IMG/VR virus record: IMGVR_UViG_3300027736_001324
Location: 124,001 to 188,000 of that record
Length of the DNA: 64,000 nucleotides
Direction: 5' to 3' (one strand)
The notes beneath the pieces were generated by a model. It did no database searches. It saw only the letters and a list, made by a program, of their open reading frames with translations, and was not told the origin of the DNA. The position numbers and the translations under genes were made by a program. Below, piece by piece: positions 8,954-63,288 of this stretch; position 1 is the first letter of the stretch, and each line of letters opens with the position of its first letter.

Positions 8954-9454
8954 ATGAGAATTTTGACCCTAGATAACGAATACTATAACTTAGAGACATT
9001 GCCAGAGGAGATAGATGATTTACGATTTGCAATATTGGACAACAGTAATCCAAGCAATGTAGATTATCATTATATACCATTAATCTTTTTAGAAAGTTTT
9101 AATGCCCCGGCACTTGTATTGAAGATTGGTAAACACACAATTAAAATGCCAGTGGATTGGCAAATATTGATTGGTGAAAAAGAGCATGGCGATTTAGAAA
9201 CATTGCCACTAACAAGTATCAATGATAGAGGATTTAATGCGTTTGAGTTTAATCCGTTAACTAGTTTTAGTCCTACCTTTCTACCTATTGAGATTGTAGA
9301 TATATACCACGATGTAACATGGTATGCTCCCCGATTAAAGAACGGGCAGTTTCTGTGTGTACCGTTGAATGATGGGCCTAAACCCGAATGTGTATATTTT
9401 GTAAAAGAAATTAGTCGTAACTGTGAGATAATAGATTATAGTCAGGCATTCTAA
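8954..9454 (+). CDS. hypothetical beta-rich protein, possibly a degenerate stand-alone Hint-like fold
   Basis: 166-aa ORF; pattern VLKIGKHTIKMPVDWQILIG ... IEIVDIYHDVTWYAPRLKNGQFLCV. Confidence 0.6.
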   Translation: MRILTLDNEYYNLETLPEEIDDLRFAILDNSNPSNVDYHYIPLIFLESFNAPALVLKIGKHTIKMPVDWQILIGEKEHGDLETLPLTSINDRGFNAFEFNPLTSFSPTFLPIEIVDIYHDVTWYAPRLKNGQFLCVPLNDGPKPECVYFVKEISRNCEIIDYSQAF

Positions 9455-10047
9455 TGGCAACAAGAAAAGTAGCAGTACCCGTTGATGAAAAATTTGACAA
9501 ACAAGATTTAGACTTGTTTGAGGTCCTTGCCGCATTAGATAAGAAAGATTATGATTTCTTTGATAGACTATCACCCGAACAACAAAAAAAGTTTGTCCCG
9601 TTTACAATGATACAATGGCTAAGTGCTATTAAAGGTAGTGAGGGATTAAGTCGTTATTATGTAATGAGTACAGCAGAGTATGCGAACAAGTATCTGTTCA
9701 ATGAGAATATTCAAAAGCATCCTAAACTACAATGGTTGATGATGTGTGCTAGTAGCCCGGGCTCAGGTAAACAATTCCATCAGTGGATACCTAACATCAG
9801 CCCTAAGGTAAGTAAATTACAAGCAGCAGCTAAACTAAAAGATATTAAAGAGTATTACAAGAAGATATATCCTAGAGCAGATAGTGATGATATTGACGCA
9901 GTAAGTGAAGCGTTTGTAGTTAATCAAAAACGCAAACTTAAATTAGCAGAATTGTTTCCTAATATGAAACTAACAGACATTGAGACATTAAATGAAACTA
10001 TTACTGAAGAACAACTTAAGCAATATGAAAGAGACCTCGGCAATTAA
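9454..10047 (+). CDS. probable clamp-loader small subunit (T4 gp62-like)
   Basis: KKFVPFTMIQWLS...ANKY...QWLM...KQFHQWI resembles the gp62 pattern; TAATG coupling. Confidence 0.5.
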   Translation: MATRKVAVPVDEKFDKQDLDLFEVLAALDKKDYDFFDRLSPEQQKKFVPFTMIQWLSAIKGSEGLSRYYVMSTAEYANKYLFNENIQKHPKLQWLMMCASSPGSGKQFHQWIPNISPKVSKLQAAAKLKDIKEYYKKIYPRADSDDIDAVSEAFVVNQKRKLKLAELFPNMKLTDIETLNETITEEQLKQYERDLGN

Positions 10048-10726
10048 GGCAGCAAAGTATGGCTGTGAATTTTGTAAGAGGGAGTTCTTGCGTGAATCAA
10101 CCACGCTTAGTCATGTATGTGAGCAGAAGCGTAGATGGTTAGATAAAGACAATCACGGCAATCGTATTGGGTTTCAATGTTGGTTGGAGTTTTATAAAAA
10201 GAATACATCAAAACGAAAGAATCTTAAGCAAGAAGATTTTATTAAGAATCCATATTACATTGCGTTTGTTAAGTTTGGTAATTATTGTGTCAACATCAAT
10301 GCGATAAATATTCCAAGATTTACTGATTGGTTATTAAAGAATCAAGTTAAGATTGACAATTGGTGTAGTGATAGTACATACACTAAATATCTAATTGAGT
10401 TTTTGAGACATGAAGATCCATTTGATGCTATACATCGTAGCATTGAAAAATGTATAGAAATGGCAAGTGACGCTAACATACAGCCACATGACTTATTGAG
10501 ATATGGCAATGCAAATAAGATTTGTTATGCGATAACAACGGGTAAGATTAGTCCATGGTTGTTGTATCAAAGCGACAGCGGGGTCCATTTCTTAGATGGA
10601 TTAAATGAAGGCCATGTTAAAATGATCATTGATTATATAAATCCAGAACAGTGGGCAATAAGGTTTAAACGTGATGCAGAACTTACGAAACGAATTAAAG
10701 ACACCCTCGGTGAAGCAGGGTACTAG
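10025..10726 (+). CDS. hypothetical protein with N-terminal zinc finger
   Basis: CEFCKREF...HVC. Confidence 0.7.
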   Translation: MKETSAIKAAKYGCEFCKREFLRESTTLSHVCEQKRRWLDKDNHGNRIGFQCWLEFYKKNTSKRKNLKQEDFIKNPYYIAFVKFGNYCVNINAINIPRFTDWLLKNQVKIDNWCSDSTYTKYLIEFLRHEDPFDAIHRSIEKCIEMASDANIQPHDLLRYGNANKICYAITTGKISPWLLYQSDSGVHFLDGLNEGHVKMIIDYINPEQWAIRFKRDAELTKRIKDTLGEAGY

Positions 10727-10907
10727 GGTTCGTATCCCTTGGATGAAAGGTGATACAATTAGTGATTGGGATGAAACTTGTATTTGGGCAATGGAACAAT
10801 TTGATTTGCCGGGTGGGAAGTTTTACACACACATGACAGAAGATTATATGGATTTTGTATTTAAAGATGAGCGTGATGCGATACATTTTAGTTTAAGATG
10901 GTTATGA
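10710..10907 (+). CDS. FxLRW-family small protein 1 (GTG start inferred)
   Basis: ends FVFKDERDAIHFSLRWL. Confidence 0.75.
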   Translation: MKQGTRVRIPWMKGDTISDWDETCIWAMEQFDLPGGKFYTHMTEDYMDFVFKDERDAIHFSLRWL

Positions 10908-11119
10908 GAAGATGGGAAGATATACGACCGGGTTGGCATGAACGTGTTATTAAACTAGATGAAAACCGCCGGCAACTGCATCGTATTGAAATAATAGATT
11001 GGGTATGTAATAAAATTGAAAATTATGAAAGGCACACATTGTGCACCTGGGATGAATTTGAAGTAAGAATAAAATTTAGATATGAACGAGACTACATTTT
11101 TTGTAGTTTAAGATGGTAA
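10904..11119 (+). CDS. FxLRW-family small protein 2
   Basis: ATGA overlap; ends IKFRYERDYIFCSLRW. Confidence 0.75.
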   Translation: MRRWEDIRPGWHERVIKLDENRRQLHRIEIIDWVCNKIENYERHTLCTWDEFEVRIKFRYERDYIFCSLRW

Positions 11120-11361
11120 CAAAAACAAAACAAGTAACTTATAAATATGTGGCCAGATTATGGGGCGCAGACTATGCCGCCCTGTTAATTTGGCTACAAA
11201 AAAATATAGGCAAATTAGTTGCCGCTAAGCCTATTGTTGCCTGGGAAGGACAAGGTTGGTATATGATATTAGTACAAGGCAACCATGGAGACCCTTATTG
11301 TGATATACATTTTGTAAATAAGAAACATTTAAAACTTTTGGAAAAAGACTGGGTTGAATGA
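11113..11361 (+). CDS. FxLRW-family small protein 3 (divergent)
   Basis: central LIWLQKNIG; ends IHFVNKKHLKLLEKDWVE. Confidence 0.65.
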   Translation: MVTKTKQVTYKYVARLWGADYAALLIWLQKNIGKLVAAKPIVAWEGQGWYMILVQGNHGDPYCDIHFVNKKHLKLLEKDWVE

Positions 11362-11660
11362 TAAAGAAACGTGCCATGGCTAACAATAGATGGGTATCTG
11401 ATTTAGCAAATCAATGGATAGATGAAATCAACGTGAAACGCCTTGAAACTGGTTATGCTGACAATCAACCTAAATGGCCCTACTGGGTTCGTCCACACAA
11501 CTACGAGGAGAAAGAGTGGTATGACATGGACAAATGGCTGCTAAACATAATGGGTGATAATAATTGGCATAAAGAAAACGCACGTTGGGTAGGCAGCAAT
11601 CGTAAGTATTGGTTCCGTGATGAAGCAGATAGAACCTTTTTCATATTGAGATGGTCATGA
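11358..11660 (+). CDS. FxLRW-family small protein 4
   Basis: ATGA overlap; ends YWFRDEADRTFFILRWS. Confidence 0.78.
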   Translation: MIKKRAMANNRWVSDLANQWIDEINVKRLETGYADNQPKWPYWVRPHNYEEKEWYDMDKWLLNIMGDNNWHKENARWVGSNRKYWFRDEADRTFFILRWS

Positions 11661-11899
11661 ACAGCAAACAGCGTAGAAAAGAAAAACGTGATATTGATAA
11701 GAATTATCACAAGGTACATCTTACAGTACGCCCAGGAATGAATTGGACTGATTGGTGTGATCAAGTTGCGGAAATGGTTAGGTGGGTTAGTGAACATACT
11801 AGGCGTGATTGTTGTTTGCAAAAAAATGAGTGGGCTGGTAGTACATTCTATTTCGTAGACGCAAAAGATGCTACACATTTTATATTGAGATGGTCATGA
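11657..11899 (+). CDS. FxLRW-family small protein 5
   Basis: ATGA overlap; ends FYFVDAKDATHFILRWS. Confidence 0.78.
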   Translation: MNSKQRRKEKRDIDKNYHKVHLTVRPGMNWTDWCDQVAEMVRWVSEHTRRDCCLQKNEWAGSTFYFVDAKDATHFILRWS

Positions 11900-12156
11900 T
11901 AGATATAGAACACGAATACATTGACAAACTTGCTAAAGATATGGCTGACAGCATTGATACAGAAGTATTGTATAATGCTATGGGTTGGACTGTTGTTAAC
12001 ATACCGCATCCATGGTACATTCCTAGTGTGCGTAATAGTGTAACAGATTGGTTAGAAGAAAATAAAATTGAATATCATGAATATCATTGTTGGGACGGCA
12101 GAATTGCTTTCAAAGAAGGTAGTGATGCTACATTTTTCATATTGAGGTGGTCATGA
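11896..12156 (+). CDS. FxLRW-family small protein 6
   Basis: ATGA overlap; ends IAFKEGSDATFFILRWS. Confidence 0.78.
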   Translation: MIDIEHEYIDKLAKDMADSIDTEVLYNAMGWTVVNIPHPWYIPSVRNSVTDWLEENKIEYHEYHCWDGRIAFKEGSDATFFILRWS

Positions 12157-12398
12157 GTAAATTTACACACAAAACAGAACGCTATTTTGGTAGCAAAGTT
12201 AATATACATACTATCTCTTGGAAGAACCAAGATGATGTTGACCCTAAAGAAATCAAGAAATGGTGTAAAAAGAATTACGGCAATTCAGGGTATGATGATG
12301 AAACTGGAAGTAATCGTTGGGTAGATAATATTAAGCAATGTGAGATAATGCTTACCCGTGACGAAGATTTAACATTGTTTTTATTGCGCTGGGAATGA
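12153..12398 (+). CDS. FxLRW-family small protein 7
   Basis: ATGA overlap; ends IMLTRDEDLTLFLLRWE. Confidence 0.78.
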   Translation: MSKFTHKTERYFGSKVNIHTISWKNQDDVDPKEIKKWCKKNYGNSGYDDETGSNRWVDNIKQCEIMLTRDEDLTLFLLRWE

Positions 12399-12598
12399 AA
12401 TCTGTAACCATCTACGGCAAAAGTGCGAATGAAGTAATAGAAATATTACATCAAATGCAAGCACACGGCTGGACTGATGGAGTAGATTTTGATTGGGCAT
12501 ATCATCGTTCTTCCACATATGATACAAGAGATCGCCGAGCAGTGTTTAATTTCTACAAAGAAGAATACAGTACTTACTTTGCATTGAGATGGGTATGA
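12395..12598 (+). CDS. FxLRW-family small protein 8
   Basis: ATGA overlap; ends FNFYKEEYSTYFALRWV. Confidence 0.78.
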   Translation: MKSVTIYGKSANEVIEILHQMQAHGWTDGVDFDWAYHRSSTYDTRDRRAVFNFYKEEYSTYFALRWV

Positions 12599-12864
12599 CC
12601 AATATATCAAAATCATTTCAAGATTATGATGACGATGATCCGGCATTACATCAACGAAAGAATCGTTGGAAGTATTGGGAAGCATTGAAAAAAGTTCGTG
12701 TAGAGTACATGGAAAACAAAACTGATTTTGACGCATATGATTTTGAAGATTATCTACAAAAGAAGTACGGTGTAAGAATGAATATTACCAATGGCAATAT
12801 AACAGATGGTTATCAGATAGTAGATGAAAAACTCTATTTAATATTTTTATTAAAATGGGGATGA
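12595..12864 (+). CDS. FxLRW-family small protein 9
   Basis: ATGA overlap; ends YQIVDEKLYLIFLLKWG. Confidence 0.75.
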   Translation: MTNISKSFQDYDDDDPALHQRKNRWKYWEALKKVRVEYMENKTDFDAYDFEDYLQKKYGVRMNITNGNITDGYQIVDEKLYLIFLLKWG

Positions 12865-12865
12865 T

Positions 12866-13138
12866 ATGGCAATAAAATACACAGAATGTTTCCATCCAGC
12901 ATATCCCAATGCCTCAGGCTCTTTATGTAAGGATAACAAATATAAAGCAGGACACAAAACAGTCTATCAAAGAGATTGTAGATATCATAAAGAGGATCCA
13001 TCTATCATTGTAAAATGGATGAGAAGAAATTTTGGTGAAAGACACCAAGGTTGGGACTTCTCTTTAGCTGGAGGATGTGTTACAATAGAGTTGTGGGATG
13101 ATAGATTTATAACAATGTATGAAATGTGGCAGATGTAA
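12866..13138 (+). CDS. FxLRW-family small protein 10 (divergent)
   Basis: central VKWMRRNFG; ends IELWDDRFITMYEMWQM. Confidence 0.7.
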   Translation: MAIKYTECFHPAYPNASGSLCKDNKYKAGHKTVYQRDCRYHKEDPSIIVKWMRRNFGERHQGWDFSLAGGCVTIELWDDRFITMYEMWQM

Positions 13139-13686
13139 TGGCAAATGATATAATGATTGATTTGGAGACACTTGACACAAGTCCATATTGTGTTATATTA
13201 ACTATAGGAGCTGTGCGGTTTGATCCTAAGGGTAATGGTGTAGTAGAACGATTAGAATTGCGTCCTACGATTGAAGAACAGACAGAAAAATATGATAGGA
13301 TAATTGATGACAGTACAATTGAATGGTGGGCAAAACAAAGCCCTGCCGCACTTGAAGAAGCGATGGGAGATGAAGGACGTGTTTCATTTAGTGAATGTAT
13401 GGAAACCCTTTATAAGTTTTGTTGGAATCGCCGTGCTGTGTGGTCTAATGGGGCTGCATTTGATATCGTTGCTTGCGAGACCGCATGGAGGCAACTTGGA
13501 GTGCGAATACCGTGGCCATTCTATACCGTACGAGATACTAGAACGTTGTATGAAGTTGCAGGAGTCAAACTAAGTGATGGCGGACATTCTACTAGTCACA
13601 AAGCAGTAGAAGATGCCGAAAGACAAGCAATTGTTGTACAAAAAGCGTATACTAAACTAATTAAAGCAGGAGTAATGGCACCATGA
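13138..13686 (+). CDS. DEDDh 3'-5' exonuclease (Rv2179c/DexA-like)
   Basis: IMIDLETL, WSNGAAFD, RDTRT and HKAVEDA motifs; TAATG coupling. Confidence 0.85.
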   Translation: MANDIMIDLETLDTSPYCVILTIGAVRFDPKGNGVVERLELRPTIEEQTEKYDRIIDDSTIEWWAKQSPAALEEAMGDEGRVSFSECMETLYKFCWNRRAVWSNGAAFDIVACETAWRQLGVRIPWPFYTVRDTRTLYEVAGVKLSDGGHSTSHKAVEDAERQAIVVQKAYTKLIKAGVMAP

Positions 13687-14000
13687 TGGTATATATTGTA
13701 GCATATAAATTTGAAACGGAAAAAGAATATGATGACTATATGCAGAATGAAGATGATTTTAAGTTGATGACTTGGTTAGTTGATAACAACATAACTGTCA
13801 TTGATGCTGAAGATTGTACTGATTTAGTAGATAATAAAGAGGTAATAGAGTTTAGTTTTAAATTTAAAAAAGACGCAAAAAAGTTTGCAAAGGCGTTTGA
13901 TTTAAAAGTAGAAGGGCCTTCCGAACGTGATTTCACTAACCCGTGGTTACCCCCCGATTGGAACGGTGACTGGGATAATCTACCGGGGTTCAGAGGATGA
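13683..14000 (+). CDS. hypothetical protein, likely a divergent 11th member of the FxLRW family
   Basis: LMTWLVDN helix and FSFKFKKDAKKFAKAF; ATGA overlaps at both ends. Confidence 0.65.
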   Translation: MMVYIVAYKFETEKEYDDYMQNEDDFKLMTWLVDNNITVIDAEDCTDLVDNKEVIEFSFKFKKDAKKFAKAFDLKVEGPSERDFTNPWLPPDWNGDWDNLPGFRG

Positions 14001-14608
14001 GAATAGATAGTGATATTGACATTGACTTTGGTTCAAGAGATAAATTGCTTGAACTGATTAAACATACAAGCGCAGCAATGCGTAATGTCAATCCTATTCG
14101 TAAACATGCTACTGGTGTATATGTTACACCTATTCCCTATGATCCAATACATGATATCGCAAGTATTGACTATACAGAAGCCGAGAAGCGTGGTTACTTC
14201 AAACTAGATTTGTTGAATGTTCATGTTTATGAGAATGTCAGAGATGAACAACATCTTAATGAATTGATGGTTGAGCCTGATTGGAGTAAACTGAAGGATA
14301 AATCTTTTGTTGAAAAACTTATTCACTTGAATAATCAGTACTACAATTTAGAGAAGATGCCAGAACCTATAGATAGTATCCCAAGATTATCTATGTTTTT
14401 AGCAGTTATTCGTCCTGGTAAAAAGCATTTGATTGGGAAATCTTGGAGTGAGATTAGTAAAACTGTATGGGATAAGGGAACTGATGGGTATGTATTCAAA
14501 CGTAGTCATAGTGTAGCCTACGCACAACTAGTAGTTGTTCACATGAATTTGTTAGGGCATTCTCTTAACGAGGGTGATGCTACGGCGTTTACTACGGCGT
14601 TTACTTAA
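13997..14608 (+). CDS. DnaE (Pol III alpha)-like mini-polymerase, C-terminal half with catalytic palm and reduced fingers
   Basis: SDIDIDF, KHATGVYV, GYFKLDLL, AVIRPG and GYVFKRSHSVAYA match DnaE PDIDIDF, KHAGGVVI, GLVKFDFL, ALxRPG and YGFNKSHSAAYA. Confidence 0.85.
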   Translation: MRIDSDIDIDFGSRDKLLELIKHTSAAMRNVNPIRKHATGVYVTPIPYDPIHDIASIDYTEAEKRGYFKLDLLNVHVYENVRDEQHLNELMVEPDWSKLKDKSFVEKLIHLNNQYYNLEKMPEPIDSIPRLSMFLAVIRPGKKHLIGKSWSEISKTVWDKGTDGYVFKRSHSVAYAQLVVVHMNLLGHSLNEGDATAFTTAFT

Positions 14609-14932
14609 TTCATTCATACTGCACGTTGGACCGTGAACCACTACTAGACTTTTGTTAGTAAAGGTCCTTAAGTAGGGTTTAAAGGGTAGCCAATCATCCT
14701 TTAAAAACAGATTGATAGGGACAAGACGATTACTTTCCCACCACCAAACTTCTCCTAATTCTAAGAACTTTTCTTTGATTGTGTTATCGGTTATAGCACC
14801 GTAATCATATATAGTGGTGACCATGTCATCACGGTTTTGAACAATACCTACATAATCTTGGTTGGCATATGAACATACTGTAATGAACGGGTGATTTTCT
14901 GTCAATCGTTTAAAGAATTCGTTTTGGATCAT
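14552..14932 (-). CDS. hypothetical protein
   Basis: 126-aa ORF with a late-type GATAAATA box on the minus strand at 14950-14957. Confidence 0.7.
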   Translation of the reverse strand: MIQNEFFKRLTENHPFITVCSYANQDYVGIVQNRDDMVTTIYDYGAITDNTIKEKFLELGEVWWWESNRLVPINLFLKDDWLPFKPYLRTFTNKSLVVVHGPTCSMNELSKRRSKRRSITLVKRMP

Positions 14933-15019
14933 TATTTTAGTTAACAGTTTATTTATCGGGTAACCAAAGTTAATTAAATTAAAATATATAGACTAAATAC
15001 GTTATAGGAGCCTACATTT

Positions 15020-47360: not shown

Positions 47361-55751
<8,391 letters not shown>

Positions 55752-62772: not shown

Positions 62773-63288
62773 ATGAAAATTGATAATTATGGACAAATAA
62801 TTCTCACAGAAGATGATCTGTGTGATTTGTATATGAGTGATCCAGCCCGCACCATTAAAGATTGTCTTGTAGATAAGCAAATAAATCTGGACAGTACGCA
62901 CATCTTTCTCTCAGAAGAAAATCTACCTACATTAGTAGAATACATAGATAAAAAATTATCAGTTGAAGAATTTGATAAAGAAAATCAATCTCAGTGGCAA
63001 ATGCCCGTAGAATACTACGAAATGGATATTGCTAAATGGGTATTAGATCAATGTAAAAACGAAGAAGAACTGCAACGTGCAGGCAACGAATTAATAAAAT
63101 TCCATGATAGGGATATGTTCCCATTATTGAAGTATTTAAAATATCTAGTTGACACAATGCGTAGAAACAATATTGTATGGGGCGTAGGTCGTGGTAGTAG
63201 TGTAGCAAGCTATGTATTGTATTTGATTGGAATTCATCGTATAAATAGTTTGTACTACCAATTATCGGTAGATGAATTTTTAAAATAA
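62773..63288 (+). CDS. DnaE (Pol III alpha)-like mini-polymerase, N-terminal half
   Basis: R...EL..F...M..LLKY...LVD..R..NIVWGVGRGSSVASYVLYLIGIHRINSLYYQLSVDEFLK matches DnaE VGPGRGSAAGSLVAYxLGITxIDPLxYDLLFERFL. Confidence 0.85.
   Translation: MKIDNYGQIILTEDDLCDLYMSDPARTIKDCLVDKQINLDSTHIFLSEENLPTLVEYIDKKLSVEEFDKENQSQWQMPVEYYEMDIAKWVLDQCKNEEELQRAGNELIKFHDRDMFPLLKYLKYLVDTMRRNNIVWGVGRGSSVASYVLYLIGIHRINSLYYQLSVDEFLK

What the first reader, a model, noticed from the sequence alone, without database searches (positions are those of the whole stretch)
10710..14000. Tandem array of 10-11 divergent small paralogues sharing a C-terminal F-x-x-[ED]-x-D-x-x-x-F-x-L-R-W motif
Seen: consecutive 65-105-aa ORFs end HFSLRWL, FCSLRW, LEKDWVE, FFILRWS, HFILRWS, FFILRWS, LFLLRWE, YFALRWV, IFLLKWG and MYEMWQM. 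Most have a central helix with Trp (CIWAMEQF, IDWVCNKI, LIWLQKNIG, DKWLLNIMG, VRWVSEH, TDWLEEN, KKWCKKNYG, VKWMRRNFG). Their N-terminal parts and loops are otherwise unrelated. An 11th-like copy lies beyond the exonuclease. Inference: a small beta-alpha-beta-beta-alpha scaffold with a constant docking helix and variable surface. It could be a diversified adaptor or specificity library that plugs into one common partner, or a bank of anti-defence or host-takeover factors. I do not recognise a described function for this family.
Basis: partly seen in the sequence, partly recalled or inferred. Interest (0 to 1): 0.82.

Follow-up and report, generated by a model that had tools for sequence, protein, structure and literature searches.

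The report
Shuffling array of small phage paralogues
Ten back-to-back genes in an uncultured 264-kb phage encode diverged copies of one small, uncharacterised, so far virus-only protein domain whose last codons also carry the start signal of the next gene, so whole genes are gained, lost and reordered between related phages; this looks like a fast-evolving accessory gene battery, but its function is untested.

Summary
Window 10671-13138 (+) carries ten contiguous, mostly overlapping ORFs of 67-100 aa. Eight end in [L/I]-[R/K]-W plus 0-1 residue, against 1 of about 512 other ORFs in the window. Profile tests place all ten in one family: c1-c7 strongly, c8 and c9 moderately, c10 weakly. The '11th copy' (13683-14000) is not supported.

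AlphaFold2 gives a small beta-(beta)-alpha-beta-beta-alpha domain (pLDDT 84.6 for c7). Pfam, PHROGs, NCBIfam, PADLOC, PDB sequences and Foldseek give no significant match.

The family is large: 3,469 clusters at 50% identity, nearly all 56-160 aa, with the domain at the extreme C-terminus. Where taxa are recorded they are viral. Arrays reach at least 28 copies in 12 kb.

In related phages c1 comes first in most arrays and c10 last in most; the middle is shuffled. Whole-gene indels break exactly at the shared junction TTGAGRTGGnnATGA. There the Leu-Arg-Trp-NNA-stop codons also encode an SD-like sequence and the next start codon.

Array genes are under purifying selection but evolve faster than their flanks (dN/dS 0.16-0.52 against 0.09-0.15).

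My best reading is a translationally coupled, recombination-shuffled battery of small binding proteins for counter-defence or host take-over. That function is inferred, not shown.

The parts
10671..10907 (+). c1, 78 aa, ends HFSLRWL; first gene of the array, overlapping the 3' end of the Zn-finger gene
   Evidence: family HMM E 1e-18; leave-out hhalign 97.0%; comes first in most related arrays listed
10898..11119 (+). c2, 73 aa, ends FCSLRW; the ATG of c3 lies inside its AGA-TGG (Arg-Trp) codons
   Evidence: hhalign 96.7%; sits second or second-to-last in different phages
11113..11361 (+). c3, 82 aa, divergent ending LEKDWVE (keeps the Trp, lacks L-R)
   Evidence: HMM E 1.6e-9; hhalign 91.0% over 46 columns; duplicated (c3 c3) in L014, L015, L017
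11358..11660 (+). c4, 100 aa, ends FFILRWS; carries the N-terminal LAxxWIDEI helix motif
   Evidence: hhalign 97.8%; belongs to the widespread 'RWYxNNxKFWFRD' subfamily (alignment A4)
11651..11899 (+). c5, 82 aa, ends HFILRWS
   Evidence: AF2 pLDDT 72.6; hhalign 98.5% over 74 columns; precisely absent in L009
11890..12156 (+). c6, 88 aa, ends FFILRWS; acidic (pI 4.6); has the N-terminal LAKDMADSIDTEVL motif
   Evidence: hhalign 97.1%; precisely absent in L025
12147..12398 (+). c7, 83 aa (81 aa from the second ATG), ends LFLLRWE; Arg encoded by CGC
   Evidence: AF2 pLDDT 84.6, pTM 0.73; hhalign 98.4% over 75 columns; dN/dS 0.16
12395..12598 (+). c8, 67 aa, ends YFALRWV
   Evidence: HMM E 1.3e-6 to 1.6e-5; hhalign 87.9%
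12589..12864 (+). c9, 91 aa, ends IFLLKWG; acidic DYDDDD N-terminal patch
   Evidence: HMM E 1.5e-10; hhalign 71.8% over 18 columns; dN/dS 0.16
12866..13138 (+). c10, 90 aa, divergent ending MYEMWQM; last gene in most related arrays; probable but weakly supported member
   Evidence: HMM E 2.4e-9 (seed member); leave-out hhalign only 28.5%, E 6e-4, with the W-helix/FG, Trp and strand elements aligned
11851..11899 (+). Reference copy of the 49-nt direct repeat at the gene 3' ends (other copies 10859-10907, 11612-11660, 12108-12156, 12550-12598). Its core TTGAGRTGGnnATGA encodes L-R-W-x-stop plus an SD-like sequence and the next start
   Evidence: 63-78% identity; codon bias, ATGA overlaps; indel breakpoints at this junction
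13683..14000 (+). 'c11', 105 aa, acidic (pI 4.3). Not a demonstrable member; at most a degenerate relative
   Evidence: HMM E 5.6, 1.5 and 0.021; hhalign 0.85%; absent from the syntenic locus L003
9992..10726 (+). Upstream anchor: 244-aa Cys/His (Zn-finger-like) protein, no Pfam family
   Evidence: used to fetch 80 of 431 syntenic IMG/VR loci; dN/dS 0.09
13126..13686 (+). Downstream anchor: Rv2179c-like 3'-5' exonuclease
   Evidence: Pfam PF16473, E 6.6e-33; dN/dS 0.15

Best explanation
The region is a tandem array of ten paralogues of one uncharacterised small-protein family; where taxa are recorded its members are viral. SHOWN: each copy is a ~60-residue alpha/beta domain (beta-alpha-beta-beta-alpha core, often with an extra N-terminal strand or helix). 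It is built around conserved aromatic and aliphatic residues: W-C-x-x-x-F-G in helix 1, R-W, F-x-F, then D-x-x-x-F-x-L-R-W in the last helix. N-terminal segments, loops and charge vary (pI 4.6-9.3). The genes are co-oriented and mostly overlap. The final codons, typically TTG-AGR-TGG-NNA-TGA, encode L-R-W-x-stop and also contain an SD-like GAGG/GAGA, an in-frame A/GTG and the ATGA start of the next gene. Because every copy ends in the same 15-50 nt, unequal or illegitimate homologous recombination adds, deletes, duplicates and reorders whole genes without breaking downstream translation signals. Related phages carry 4 to about 21 copies at this locus. Genomes in the wider family carry at least 28. 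Indel breakpoints sit exactly at the junction. INFERRED: the array is one polycistronic, translationally coupled unit. INFERRED FUNCTION: each paralogue is a non-enzymatic binder that uses its variable surface or N-terminus to bind a different host or defence protein. The array would then be a fast-turnover counter-defence or host-takeover battery.
For: Family and fold: homology beyond the motif; c1-c10 only; AF2 models of c5 and c7 share one core. No known family. Size and viral restriction: 854 hits; 3,469 clusters at 50% identity, with the domain at the extreme C-terminus (a basic residue, Trp/Phe and one further residue in 116 of 150). ESM Atlas neighbours are 95-100% viruses. No hit for the c4-like pattern in 185,579 species genomes. 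Arrays elsewhere: at least 16 copies in L085; 511 members in 79 loci, all on the query strand and none on the other; up to 28 in 12 kb. Shuffling: order and composition; c5 and c6 precisely absent in L009 and L025, junction to junction. Dual coding: (Leu TTG 62% against 22% background; Arg AGG 37% against 7%; AGR 81% against 45%; 190 of 274 junctions are ATGA; the last residue is almost always one with an NNA codon); (SD-type AAGGA(G) is enriched upstream of long ORFs in this phage). Protein-level constraint persists: Arg is kept with CGN codons in about 19% of cases, including c7. Selection: dN/dS 0.16-0.52 in array genes against 0.09-0.15 in flanks. Non-enzymatic: the charged loop before the last helix (RDEKD in distant members) is not conserved in the window copies, and only the Asp persists.
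Against: No experiment, known homologue or known partner links the family to defence or host proteins, so the function rests on analogy with fast-evolving viral accessory gene arrays. The host is unknown. Expression timing is unknown: sigma-70-like promoter matches are not enriched (24 found, 28.8 expected). The SD reading of TTGAGRTGG is an inference; the same bias would also arise from selection for an upstream in-frame A/GTG start. Only 4 motif-bearing genes are followed by a real gap, too few to test whether the codon bias disappears without an overlapping gene. Both AF2 models used family alignments, so they are not independent evidence of a common fold. c10 membership is weak.
Confidence: 0.45

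Rival explanations
1. Adaptor library with a constant docking helix: the invariant F-x-L-R-W C-terminus is an exposed interface that plugs every paralogue into one common partner, while the variable part selects substrates.
For: L, R/K and W are 95-99% conserved and almost always within one residue of the C-terminus. Arg is a conserved charged residue that could be exposed. c1 and c10 keep fixed positions next to the Zn-finger protein and the exonuclease in most arrays.
Against: The conserved residues are mostly hydrophobic and fit a buried helix packed on the sheet. The fixed distance to the stop codon is explained by the ATGA/NNA overlap. c3 and c10 lack L-R yet are retained. No neighbour co-occurs across the wider family: the Zn-finger homologue is in 28 of 79 loci and the exonuclease in 22 of 79. 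Other arrays sit beside cytidylyltransferase, metallophosphatase, HSP20, ClpS or heme-oxygenase genes.
Confidence: 0.15
2. The shared ending is purely a nucleotide-level signal (ribosome-binding site, start codon or recombination site of the next gene) and the proteins are not truly homologous.
For: Strong codon bias at the motif, NNA last codon and ATGA overlaps. 49-nt direct repeats at gene ends.
Against: Profile-profile similarity spans 33-75 columns for c1-c7, with controls at 0.2-0.9%. Conserved W-helix/FG and R-W elements lie 30-50 residues upstream of the junction. Arg is kept with CGN codons and Lys substitutes conservatively. The AF2 models share a core. dN/dS is below 1.
Confidence: 0.04
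3. Virion-associated or capsid-targeted small proteins, analogous to the T-even internal proteins, packaged and injected with the DNA.
For: Some distant members carry an N-terminal ~50-aa segment homologous to the N-terminal region of T4-type major capsid protein: P0289 matches Pfam Gp23 positions 4-53 (E 6.6e-10) and phrog_138 (E 1.9e-9). An ESM Atlas cluster of 113 members has 13% Gp23 hits. Polymorphic arrays with a constant terminal element recall the T-even ip loci (my own knowledge).
Against: None of the ten window copies has this segment. The array lies in the replication/recombination gene block, not the head module. The constant element is part of a folded domain, not a short cleavable leader.
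Confidence: 0.08
4. Accessory subunits or modulators of the phage replisome or recombination machinery, as suggested by the position between UvsW-like helicase, exonuclease, split DnaE, primase and DnaB.
For: Genomic context in the window and in the syntenic clade.
Against: About two thirds of the wider-family loci show other contexts within the fetched flanks. Copy number varies from 4 to more than 20 between close relatives whose replication genes are conserved, which is unusual for core replisome parts.
Confidence: 0.06
5. SUI1/eIF1/YciH-like translation-factor mimics that act on the ribosome.
For: The only coherent group among the top Foldseek PDB hits is eIF1, aIF1, YciH, DENR and eIF2D-C (TM 0.41-0.50, probability 0.4-0.9), with matching beta-beta-alpha-beta-beta-alpha order. 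A mimivirus-type SUI1-like protein also appears in BFVD.
Against: All E-values are at least 0.07. The family lacks the fifth strand. hhalign of A3 against E. coli YciH gives 0.06%. There is no Pfam SUI1 hit.
Confidence: 0.04

Closest known systems
PeSL-mediated modular shuffling in hyperplastic regions of T4-type phages (PMC2839356, PMC4122927)
   Same: Clusters of small, mostly unknown ORFs in myovirus genomes are gained, lost and swapped between close relatives by recombination at short conserved sequences that also carry expression signals.
   Different: PeSLs are intergenic promoter/stem-loop cassettes flanking unrelated ORFs. Here there is no intergenic space and no stable hairpin (z-scores -1.4 to +1.6), and promoter/terminator matches are not clearly enriched. 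The repeated element lies inside the coding sequence, encodes the conserved C-terminus of homologous proteins, and carries translation rather than transcription signals.
Polymorphic internal-protein (ip) loci of T-even phages (own knowledge: variable proteins sharing a short N-terminal capsid-targeting sequence; T4 IPI* blocks a host restriction system)
   Same: A tandem, strain-variable set of small proteins combining a constant terminal element with variable bodies; an anti-restriction role is known for one member.
   Different: The constant element here is C-terminal and part of a folded domain, not an N-terminal cleavable leader. The proteins are homologous to each other throughout the domain. 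No capsid-targeting sequence is present in the window copies.
Multigene families and 'genomic accordions' of large eukaryotic DNA viruses, such as poxvirus and ASFV MGF families (own knowledge)
   Same: Tandem paralogue families with rapid copy-number change between strains, faster protein evolution than core genes, and roles in countering host defences.
   Different: A different virus realm and unrelated proteins. The dual-coded junction and translational coupling are prokaryote-specific features.
Tandem immunity-protein arrays of bacterial polymorphic toxin systems, such as SUKH/Imm families (own knowledge)
   Same: Runs of small divergent paralogues, each thought to neutralise a different protein.
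   Different: Those are cellular, lie next to toxin genes and belong to described Pfam families. This family is absent from the 185,579 species genomes searched with the c4-like pattern and has no Pfam match.
SUI1/eIF1/YciH fold
   Same: Similar size and beta-beta-alpha-beta-beta-alpha order; best coherent Foldseek group.
   Different: Not significant (E >= 0.07, TM <= 0.5), lacks the last strand, no sequence-profile relation.

Membership tests
The new 'LRW-end' small-protein family itself (defined here by alignment A3 / iterated HMM) | Profile match over the W-helix/FG, R-W, F-x-F and D-x-x-x-F-x-L-R-W elements | tested here: met
   c1-c10 HMM E 1e-18 to 1.6e-5 (seed members). Leave-one-out hhalign 72-98.5% for c1-c9 and 28.5% for c10. 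c11 fails.
The new 'LRW-end' small-protein family itself | Domain ends within 0-2 residues of the C-terminus | tested here: met
   All ten copies; 141 of 150 library representatives.
SUI1/eIF1/YciH (Pfam SUI1) | Sequence-profile similarity to SUI1-family proteins | tested here: not met
   No Pfam hit for 110 members. hhalign of A3 against E. coli YciH 0.06%.
SUI1/eIF1/YciH (Pfam SUI1) | Five-stranded beta-beta-alpha-beta-beta-alpha-beta fold with significant structural superposition | tested here: inconclusive
   Foldseek TM 0.41-0.50, E 0.07-0.8. The model has four strands and ends after helix 2.
PeSL cassettes of T4-type hyperplastic regions | Conserved intergenic promoter plus stem-loop motif flanking each ORF | tested here: not met
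   Genes overlap and no intergenic spacers exist. Promoter-like sites 24 against 28.8 expected, terminator-like 6 against 3.3. Junction RNA folds are not more stable than shuffles.
T-even internal proteins | Shared N-terminal capsid-targeting leader with a protease cleavage site | tested here: not met
   N-termini are variable. Only M-V-M/M-G-M recurs, as a by-product of the overlap with R-W-x-stop.
Known anti-phage defence components (PADLOC) and NCBIfam-named families | HMM match above threshold | tested here: not met
   No meaningful hits for 110 members.
Known anti-defence proteins (anti-CRISPR, anti-RM and others) | Homology to a characterised inhibitor, or adjacency to an Aca-type HTH regulator | not testable with these tools
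   No anti-defence library was available. PDB sequence and fold searches, which include many solved inhibitors, gave nothing significant. No HTH-type neighbour was detected in the Pfam scan of the flanking genes.
Polymorphic-toxin immunity arrays (SUKH/Imm) | Pfam immunity domain and an adjacent toxin gene in a cellular genome | tested here: not met
   No Pfam hit; phage context only.

The most novel reading that the evidence does not exclude
The family is an integrase-free 'plug-and-play' cassette system. The last ~15 nt of every gene would serve three roles at once: the conserved end of the protein fold, the ribosome-binding site and start of the next gene, and the recombination site. Uncultured aquatic jumbo and T4-like phages could then assemble and reshuffle libraries of up to dozens of small inhibitors against host defences or host machinery. 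Some members may additionally be fused to fragments of the major capsid protein as decoys or targeting signals.
Probability: 0.2. Interest if true: 0.85.

Novelty: new variant of a known kind. Interest (0 to 1): 0.66.

Why it matters
If the reading is right, this is one of the largest uncharacterised small-protein families of tailed phages: at least 3,469 clusters at 50% identity, none found in 50,697 GenBank phage records with three tblastn queries, and none in PHROGs. It would give a concrete, testable example of how phages keep a rapidly changing gene battery expressed, because the reusable junction is written into the coding sequence. It also offers a rich source of candidate inhibitors of bacterial proteins or defence systems. 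A compact ~60-residue scaffold that tolerates extreme sequence variation could interest protein engineers. Even if the function proves mundane, the dual-coded junction explains the odd fixed C-terminus and the recurring M-V-M N-termini. It is also a useful annotation rule for such arrays.

Tried and rejected
1. Pfam, PHROGs, NCBIfam and PADLOC scans of the ten copies and of 110 family members gave only scattered sub-threshold hits.

2. A PDB sequence-profile search gave nothing below E 2.

3. Foldseek against PDB with two models gave no hit at E <= 1e-3. The SUI1-like lead was tested by hhalign against YciH and rejected at sequence level.

4. Foldseek against BFVD returned only uncharacterised 'uncultured Caudovirales phage' proteins; the best had TM 0.73 and E 2.3e-3.

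5. tblastn of c7, P0155 and P0170, and blastn of the L085 array, against 50,697 GenBank phage records gave no real match.

With A4 it found no relative.

7. ESM Atlas neighbours are all unnamed viral clusters, and no structure search was possible.

8. Promoter/terminator scans and RNA folding of nine junctions showed no PeSL-like element or hairpin.

9. c11 and ORF 62773-63288, the next-best HMM scores, were rejected as members. The latter is a DnaE fragment.

10. Two literature searches for a description of such arrays found nothing relevant.

11. L001, a 234-kb JGI contig, was not used for gene-content conclusions because many of its genes are broken by apparent assembly errors.

12. A possible Cys/His zinc site in the c10 N-terminus was dropped because those residues are not conserved in orthologues.

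13. I suspected similarity between the c4/c6 N-terminal helix and a capsid-protein helix. It has no Pfam support and is not claimed.

Full report
WHAT IS THERE. The window is part of IMG/VR contig IMGVR_UViG_3300027736_001324, which is 263,709 bp (L007 is 100% identical). It is an uncultured jumbo myovirus. It encodes a tail sheath and a gp15-like sheath stabiliser, a UvsX/RecA-like protein, a UvsW-like helicase, a primase, DnaB and a DnaE-type polymerase in pieces. Its only DNA similarity to GenBank phages is 254 nt shared with PA5oct-like Pseudomonas phages, and this lies outside the finding.

Between a 244-aa Cys/His protein (9992-10726) and an Rv2179c-like exonuclease (13126-13686) lie ten contiguous + strand ORFs of 67-100 aa, c1-c10, spanning 10671-13138.

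IS IT MORE THAN CHANCE, AND ARE THEY HOMOLOGOUS?
- The ending [LIMVFA][RK]W + 0-2 residues occurs in 8 of the 10 array ORFs and in 1 of about 512 other stop-to-stop ORFs of at least 40 aa.
- Pairwise BLAST shows mostly the last ~15 residues, with a few longer matches (c2/c6 over 46 aa, c4/c7 over 57 aa).
- I fetched 80 of the 431 syntenic IMG/VR loci. An iterated HMM converged on about 590 ORFs in 44 subfamilies, almost all ending F-x-L-R-W-x.
- In leave-one-subfamily-out profile-profile tests, each window copy's orthologue group matches the rest of the family at 97.0, 96.7, 91.0, 97.8, 98.5, 97.1, 98.4, 87.9, 71.8 and 28.5% (c1..c10) over 18-75 columns. c11 and four flanking genes give 0.2-0.9%.
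- A six-frame scan of the 64-kb window finds exactly c1-c10.
- In a wider set of 79 loci scanned on both strands, 511 hits lie on the array strand and none on the other, which serves as an internal specificity control.

So ten copies are real paralogues. c10 is the weakest. The proposed 11th copy (13683-14000) is not supported.

FOLD. AlphaFold2 was run on c5 with the 10-sequence alignment (pLDDT 72.6) and on c7 with a 110-sequence family alignment (pLDDT 84.6, pTM 0.73). Both give the same core: strand, helix carrying the invariant Trp, a two-strand hairpin, then a terminal helix ending in L-R-W. An extra N-terminal helix (c5) or strand (c7) precedes the core. Both models depend on family alignments, so they are not independent proof of a common fold.

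Across 150 distant representatives the conserved positions are W, C, F and G in helix 1, R-W at strand 2, F-x-F in strand 3, an Asp at the start of the last helix, and F-x-L-R-W. These are mainly core-type residues. The charged RDEKD loop seen in distant members is not kept in the window copies, which argues against a catalytic site. The proteins are hydrophilic and Trp-rich, with pI from 4.6 to 9.3.

WHAT IS IT RELATED TO? Nothing described.
- Pfam, PHROGs, NCBIfam, PADLOC and PDB sequence profiles are negative.
- Foldseek against PDB gives no hit at E <= 1e-3. The only coherent group is SUI1/eIF1/YciH-type domains (TM 0.41-0.50), but hhalign against YciH gives 0.06%.
- Foldseek against BFVD finds only uncharacterised proteins of uncultured phages.

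HOW BIG IS THE FAMILY?
- The 10-copy profile finds 854 proteins at E <= 0.01, all unnamed. The listed top hits are mostly orthologues of individual copies at 73-95% identity.
- The 110-sequence profile finds 3,469 clusters at 50% identity at E <= 1e-3. Nearly all are 56-160 aa, and the match runs to the last one or two residues.
- ESM Atlas neighbours are 95-100% viral.
- The c4-like pattern is absent from 185,579 bacterial and archaeal species genomes.
- Three tblastn queries find nothing in 50,697 GenBank phage records.
- Arrays also occur elsewhere: in a contig with heme oxygenase, bilin reductase, HSP20 and ClpS neighbours (at least 16 copies, L085), in L087 and L089, and with up to 28 copies in 12 kb of a 374-kb contig. 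These contexts differ from the window's: cytidylyltransferase, metallophosphatase, DUF3307.

ARRAY DYNAMICS. In the syntenic clade, c1 comes first in most arrays listed and c10 last in most. The middle differs between phages whose flanking proteins are 65-100% identical. There are 4 to about 21 members, duplications (c3 c3, c6 c6), relocation of c2, and 34 subfamilies absent from the window. DNA alignment shows that L009 lacks exactly c5 and L025 lacks exactly c6, with both breakpoints inside the shared TGGnCATGA junction. The gene 3' ends form a 49-nt direct-repeat family at 63-78% identity.

THE JUNCTION IS DUAL-CODED. A typical gene end reads TTG AGR TGG NNA TGA. The next gene starts at the A/GTG inside Arg-Trp and/or at the ATGA overlap. 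This explains the recurrent M-V-M and M-G-M N-termini.

In 351 non-redundant junctions, 274 carry the motif and 190 of those are ATGA overlaps. The residue after Trp is almost always one that has an NNA codon (S, L, Q, G, E, T, A, V). Codon use at the motif departs strongly from the rest of the same genes:

| Codon at the motif | At motif | Rest of the gene |
|---|---|---|
| Leu TTG | 62% | 22% |
| Arg AGG | 37% | 7% |
| Arg AGA + AGG | 81% | 45% |
| Arg CGT | 2.5% | 32% |

(All.) TTGAGGTGG contains GAGGTG, which is complementary to the 16S rRNA 3' end, five bases before the ATG. SD-type AAGGA(G) is enriched upstream of long ORFs in this phage. The junctions are not more structured than shuffled sequence.

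Protein-level constraint is nevertheless present. Arg is kept with CGN codons in about 19% of cases, including c7, and Lys is the only common substitute. Only four motif-bearing genes are followed by a true gap, too few to separate the two constraints. I infer, but have not shown, translational coupling and recombination at this junction.

SELECTION. Median pairwise dN/dS is 0.16-0.52 for the ten subfamilies. It is 0.09-0.15 for the Zn-finger protein, the 197-aa protein, the exonuclease and the DnaE fragment in the same loci. The genes are real and constrained, but evolve roughly two to five times faster at protein level than their flanks.

MECHANISM. Shown: one domain family, tandem co-oriented overlapping genes, cassette-level turnover at a shared junction, nucleotide bias consistent with embedded translation signals, purifying but relaxed selection, and viral-only taxa where recorded.

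Inferred: the proteins are non-enzymatic binders whose specificity lies in the variable N-termini and loops. The array would be an accessory battery against host defences or for host take-over (confidence about 0.45 for the whole statement).

The conserved residues look like core residues, their fixed distance from the stop has a nucleotide-level explanation, and no common partner gene co-occurs. Other rivals are: packaged proteins (0.08), replisome accessories (0.06), SUI1-like translation mimics (0.04), and a pure nucleotide-signal artefact (0.04; contradicted).

COMPARISON AND NOVELTY. The behaviour resembles PeSL-mediated shuffling in T4-type hyperplastic regions (PMC2839356, PMC4122927). 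From my own knowledge it also resembles the polymorphic internal-protein loci of T-even phages and the multigene families of large eukaryotic DNA viruses. It differs in two ways: the shuffled units are homologous to one another, and the reusable element lies inside the coding sequence, serving at once as protein C-terminus and next-gene start region. I rate it a new variant of a known kind: a hypervariable phage accessory array, here built from an undescribed and very large protein family.

LIMITS. There is no functional evidence, no host and no expression data. c10 membership is weak. The environment of the source samples was not determined here.

Noticed in passing
window 62773-63288 (+) and 13997-14608 (+): DnaE-type polymerase appears split into separately encoded pieces. 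ORF 62773-63288 matches Pfam DNA_pol3_alpha positions 16-94 (E 1.5e-8) and ends ...SVDEFLK. ORF 13997-14608 begins MRIDSDIDIDF and later has KRSHSVAYA, which from my own knowledge of DnaE is what follows. The downstream piece lies about 49 kb upstream of the N-terminal piece in the genome.
   Followed up: partly
window 8954-9454 (+): This 166-aa ORF has no Pfam family. Bases 9002-9255 are the only part of window 9000-15000 with DNA similarity to GenBank phages: 66-68% over 200-254 nt to PA5oct-like Pseudomonas jumbo phages. It is conserved in 26 of the 79 wider-family loci.
   Followed up: no
P0289, P0166 (distant family members, not in the window); L090: Some family members carry an N-terminal ~50-aa segment homologous to the N-terminal region of T4-type major capsid protein: Pfam Gp23 positions 4-53 (E 6.6e-10) and phrog_138 (E 1.9e-9). 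From my own knowledge this stretch includes the Gol peptide region of T4 gp23. An ESM Atlas cluster of 113 members shows the same in 13% of members. It could be a decoy or a targeting signal, or a fusion artefact.
   Followed up: partly
P0150, P0209, P0275, P0219 (distant family members): These longer members share an N-terminal segment with a Walker-A-like motif (YQxxLxxxLxxxxxGxxxxxxxGRxTGKS), too short to be an ATPase domain. There is no Pfam or PHROG match beyond a weak divDNAB hit (E 0.017).
   Followed up: partly
window 11358-11440 (c4 N-terminus) and 11890-12010 (c6 N-terminus): c4 and c6 share a recurrent N-terminal helix motif (LAxxM/WxxxIDxxVL), also seen in distant relatives P0153, P0176 and P0207. 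The N-terminal parts are therefore not all unrelated.
   Followed up: partly
window 47361-55751 (+): A single 2,796-aa ORF in a stretch with GC 0.49-0.51, against 0.34-0.41 over most of the window. Many long antisense ORFs lie within it, typical of GC-rich or repetitive coding sequence. It was not examined.
   Followed up: no
window 13683-14000 (+): 'c11' is a very acidic 105-aa protein (pI 4.3) with only marginal resemblance to the family. Only three distinct orthologues were found among the 84 loci, and it is absent from L003.
   Followed up: yes
L001 (JGI contig Ga0509788_06657, 233,933 bp): This related phage contig has nearly every gene broken into short ORFs, including the helicase, Zn-finger protein, exonuclease and primase. 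It looks like an error-rich assembly rather than real pseudogenes.
   Followed up: no
window 11501-11878 (-) and 12446-12736 (-): Antisense ORFs of 125 and 96 aa lie inside the array. They have no family or database support and are probably spurious.
   Followed up: partly
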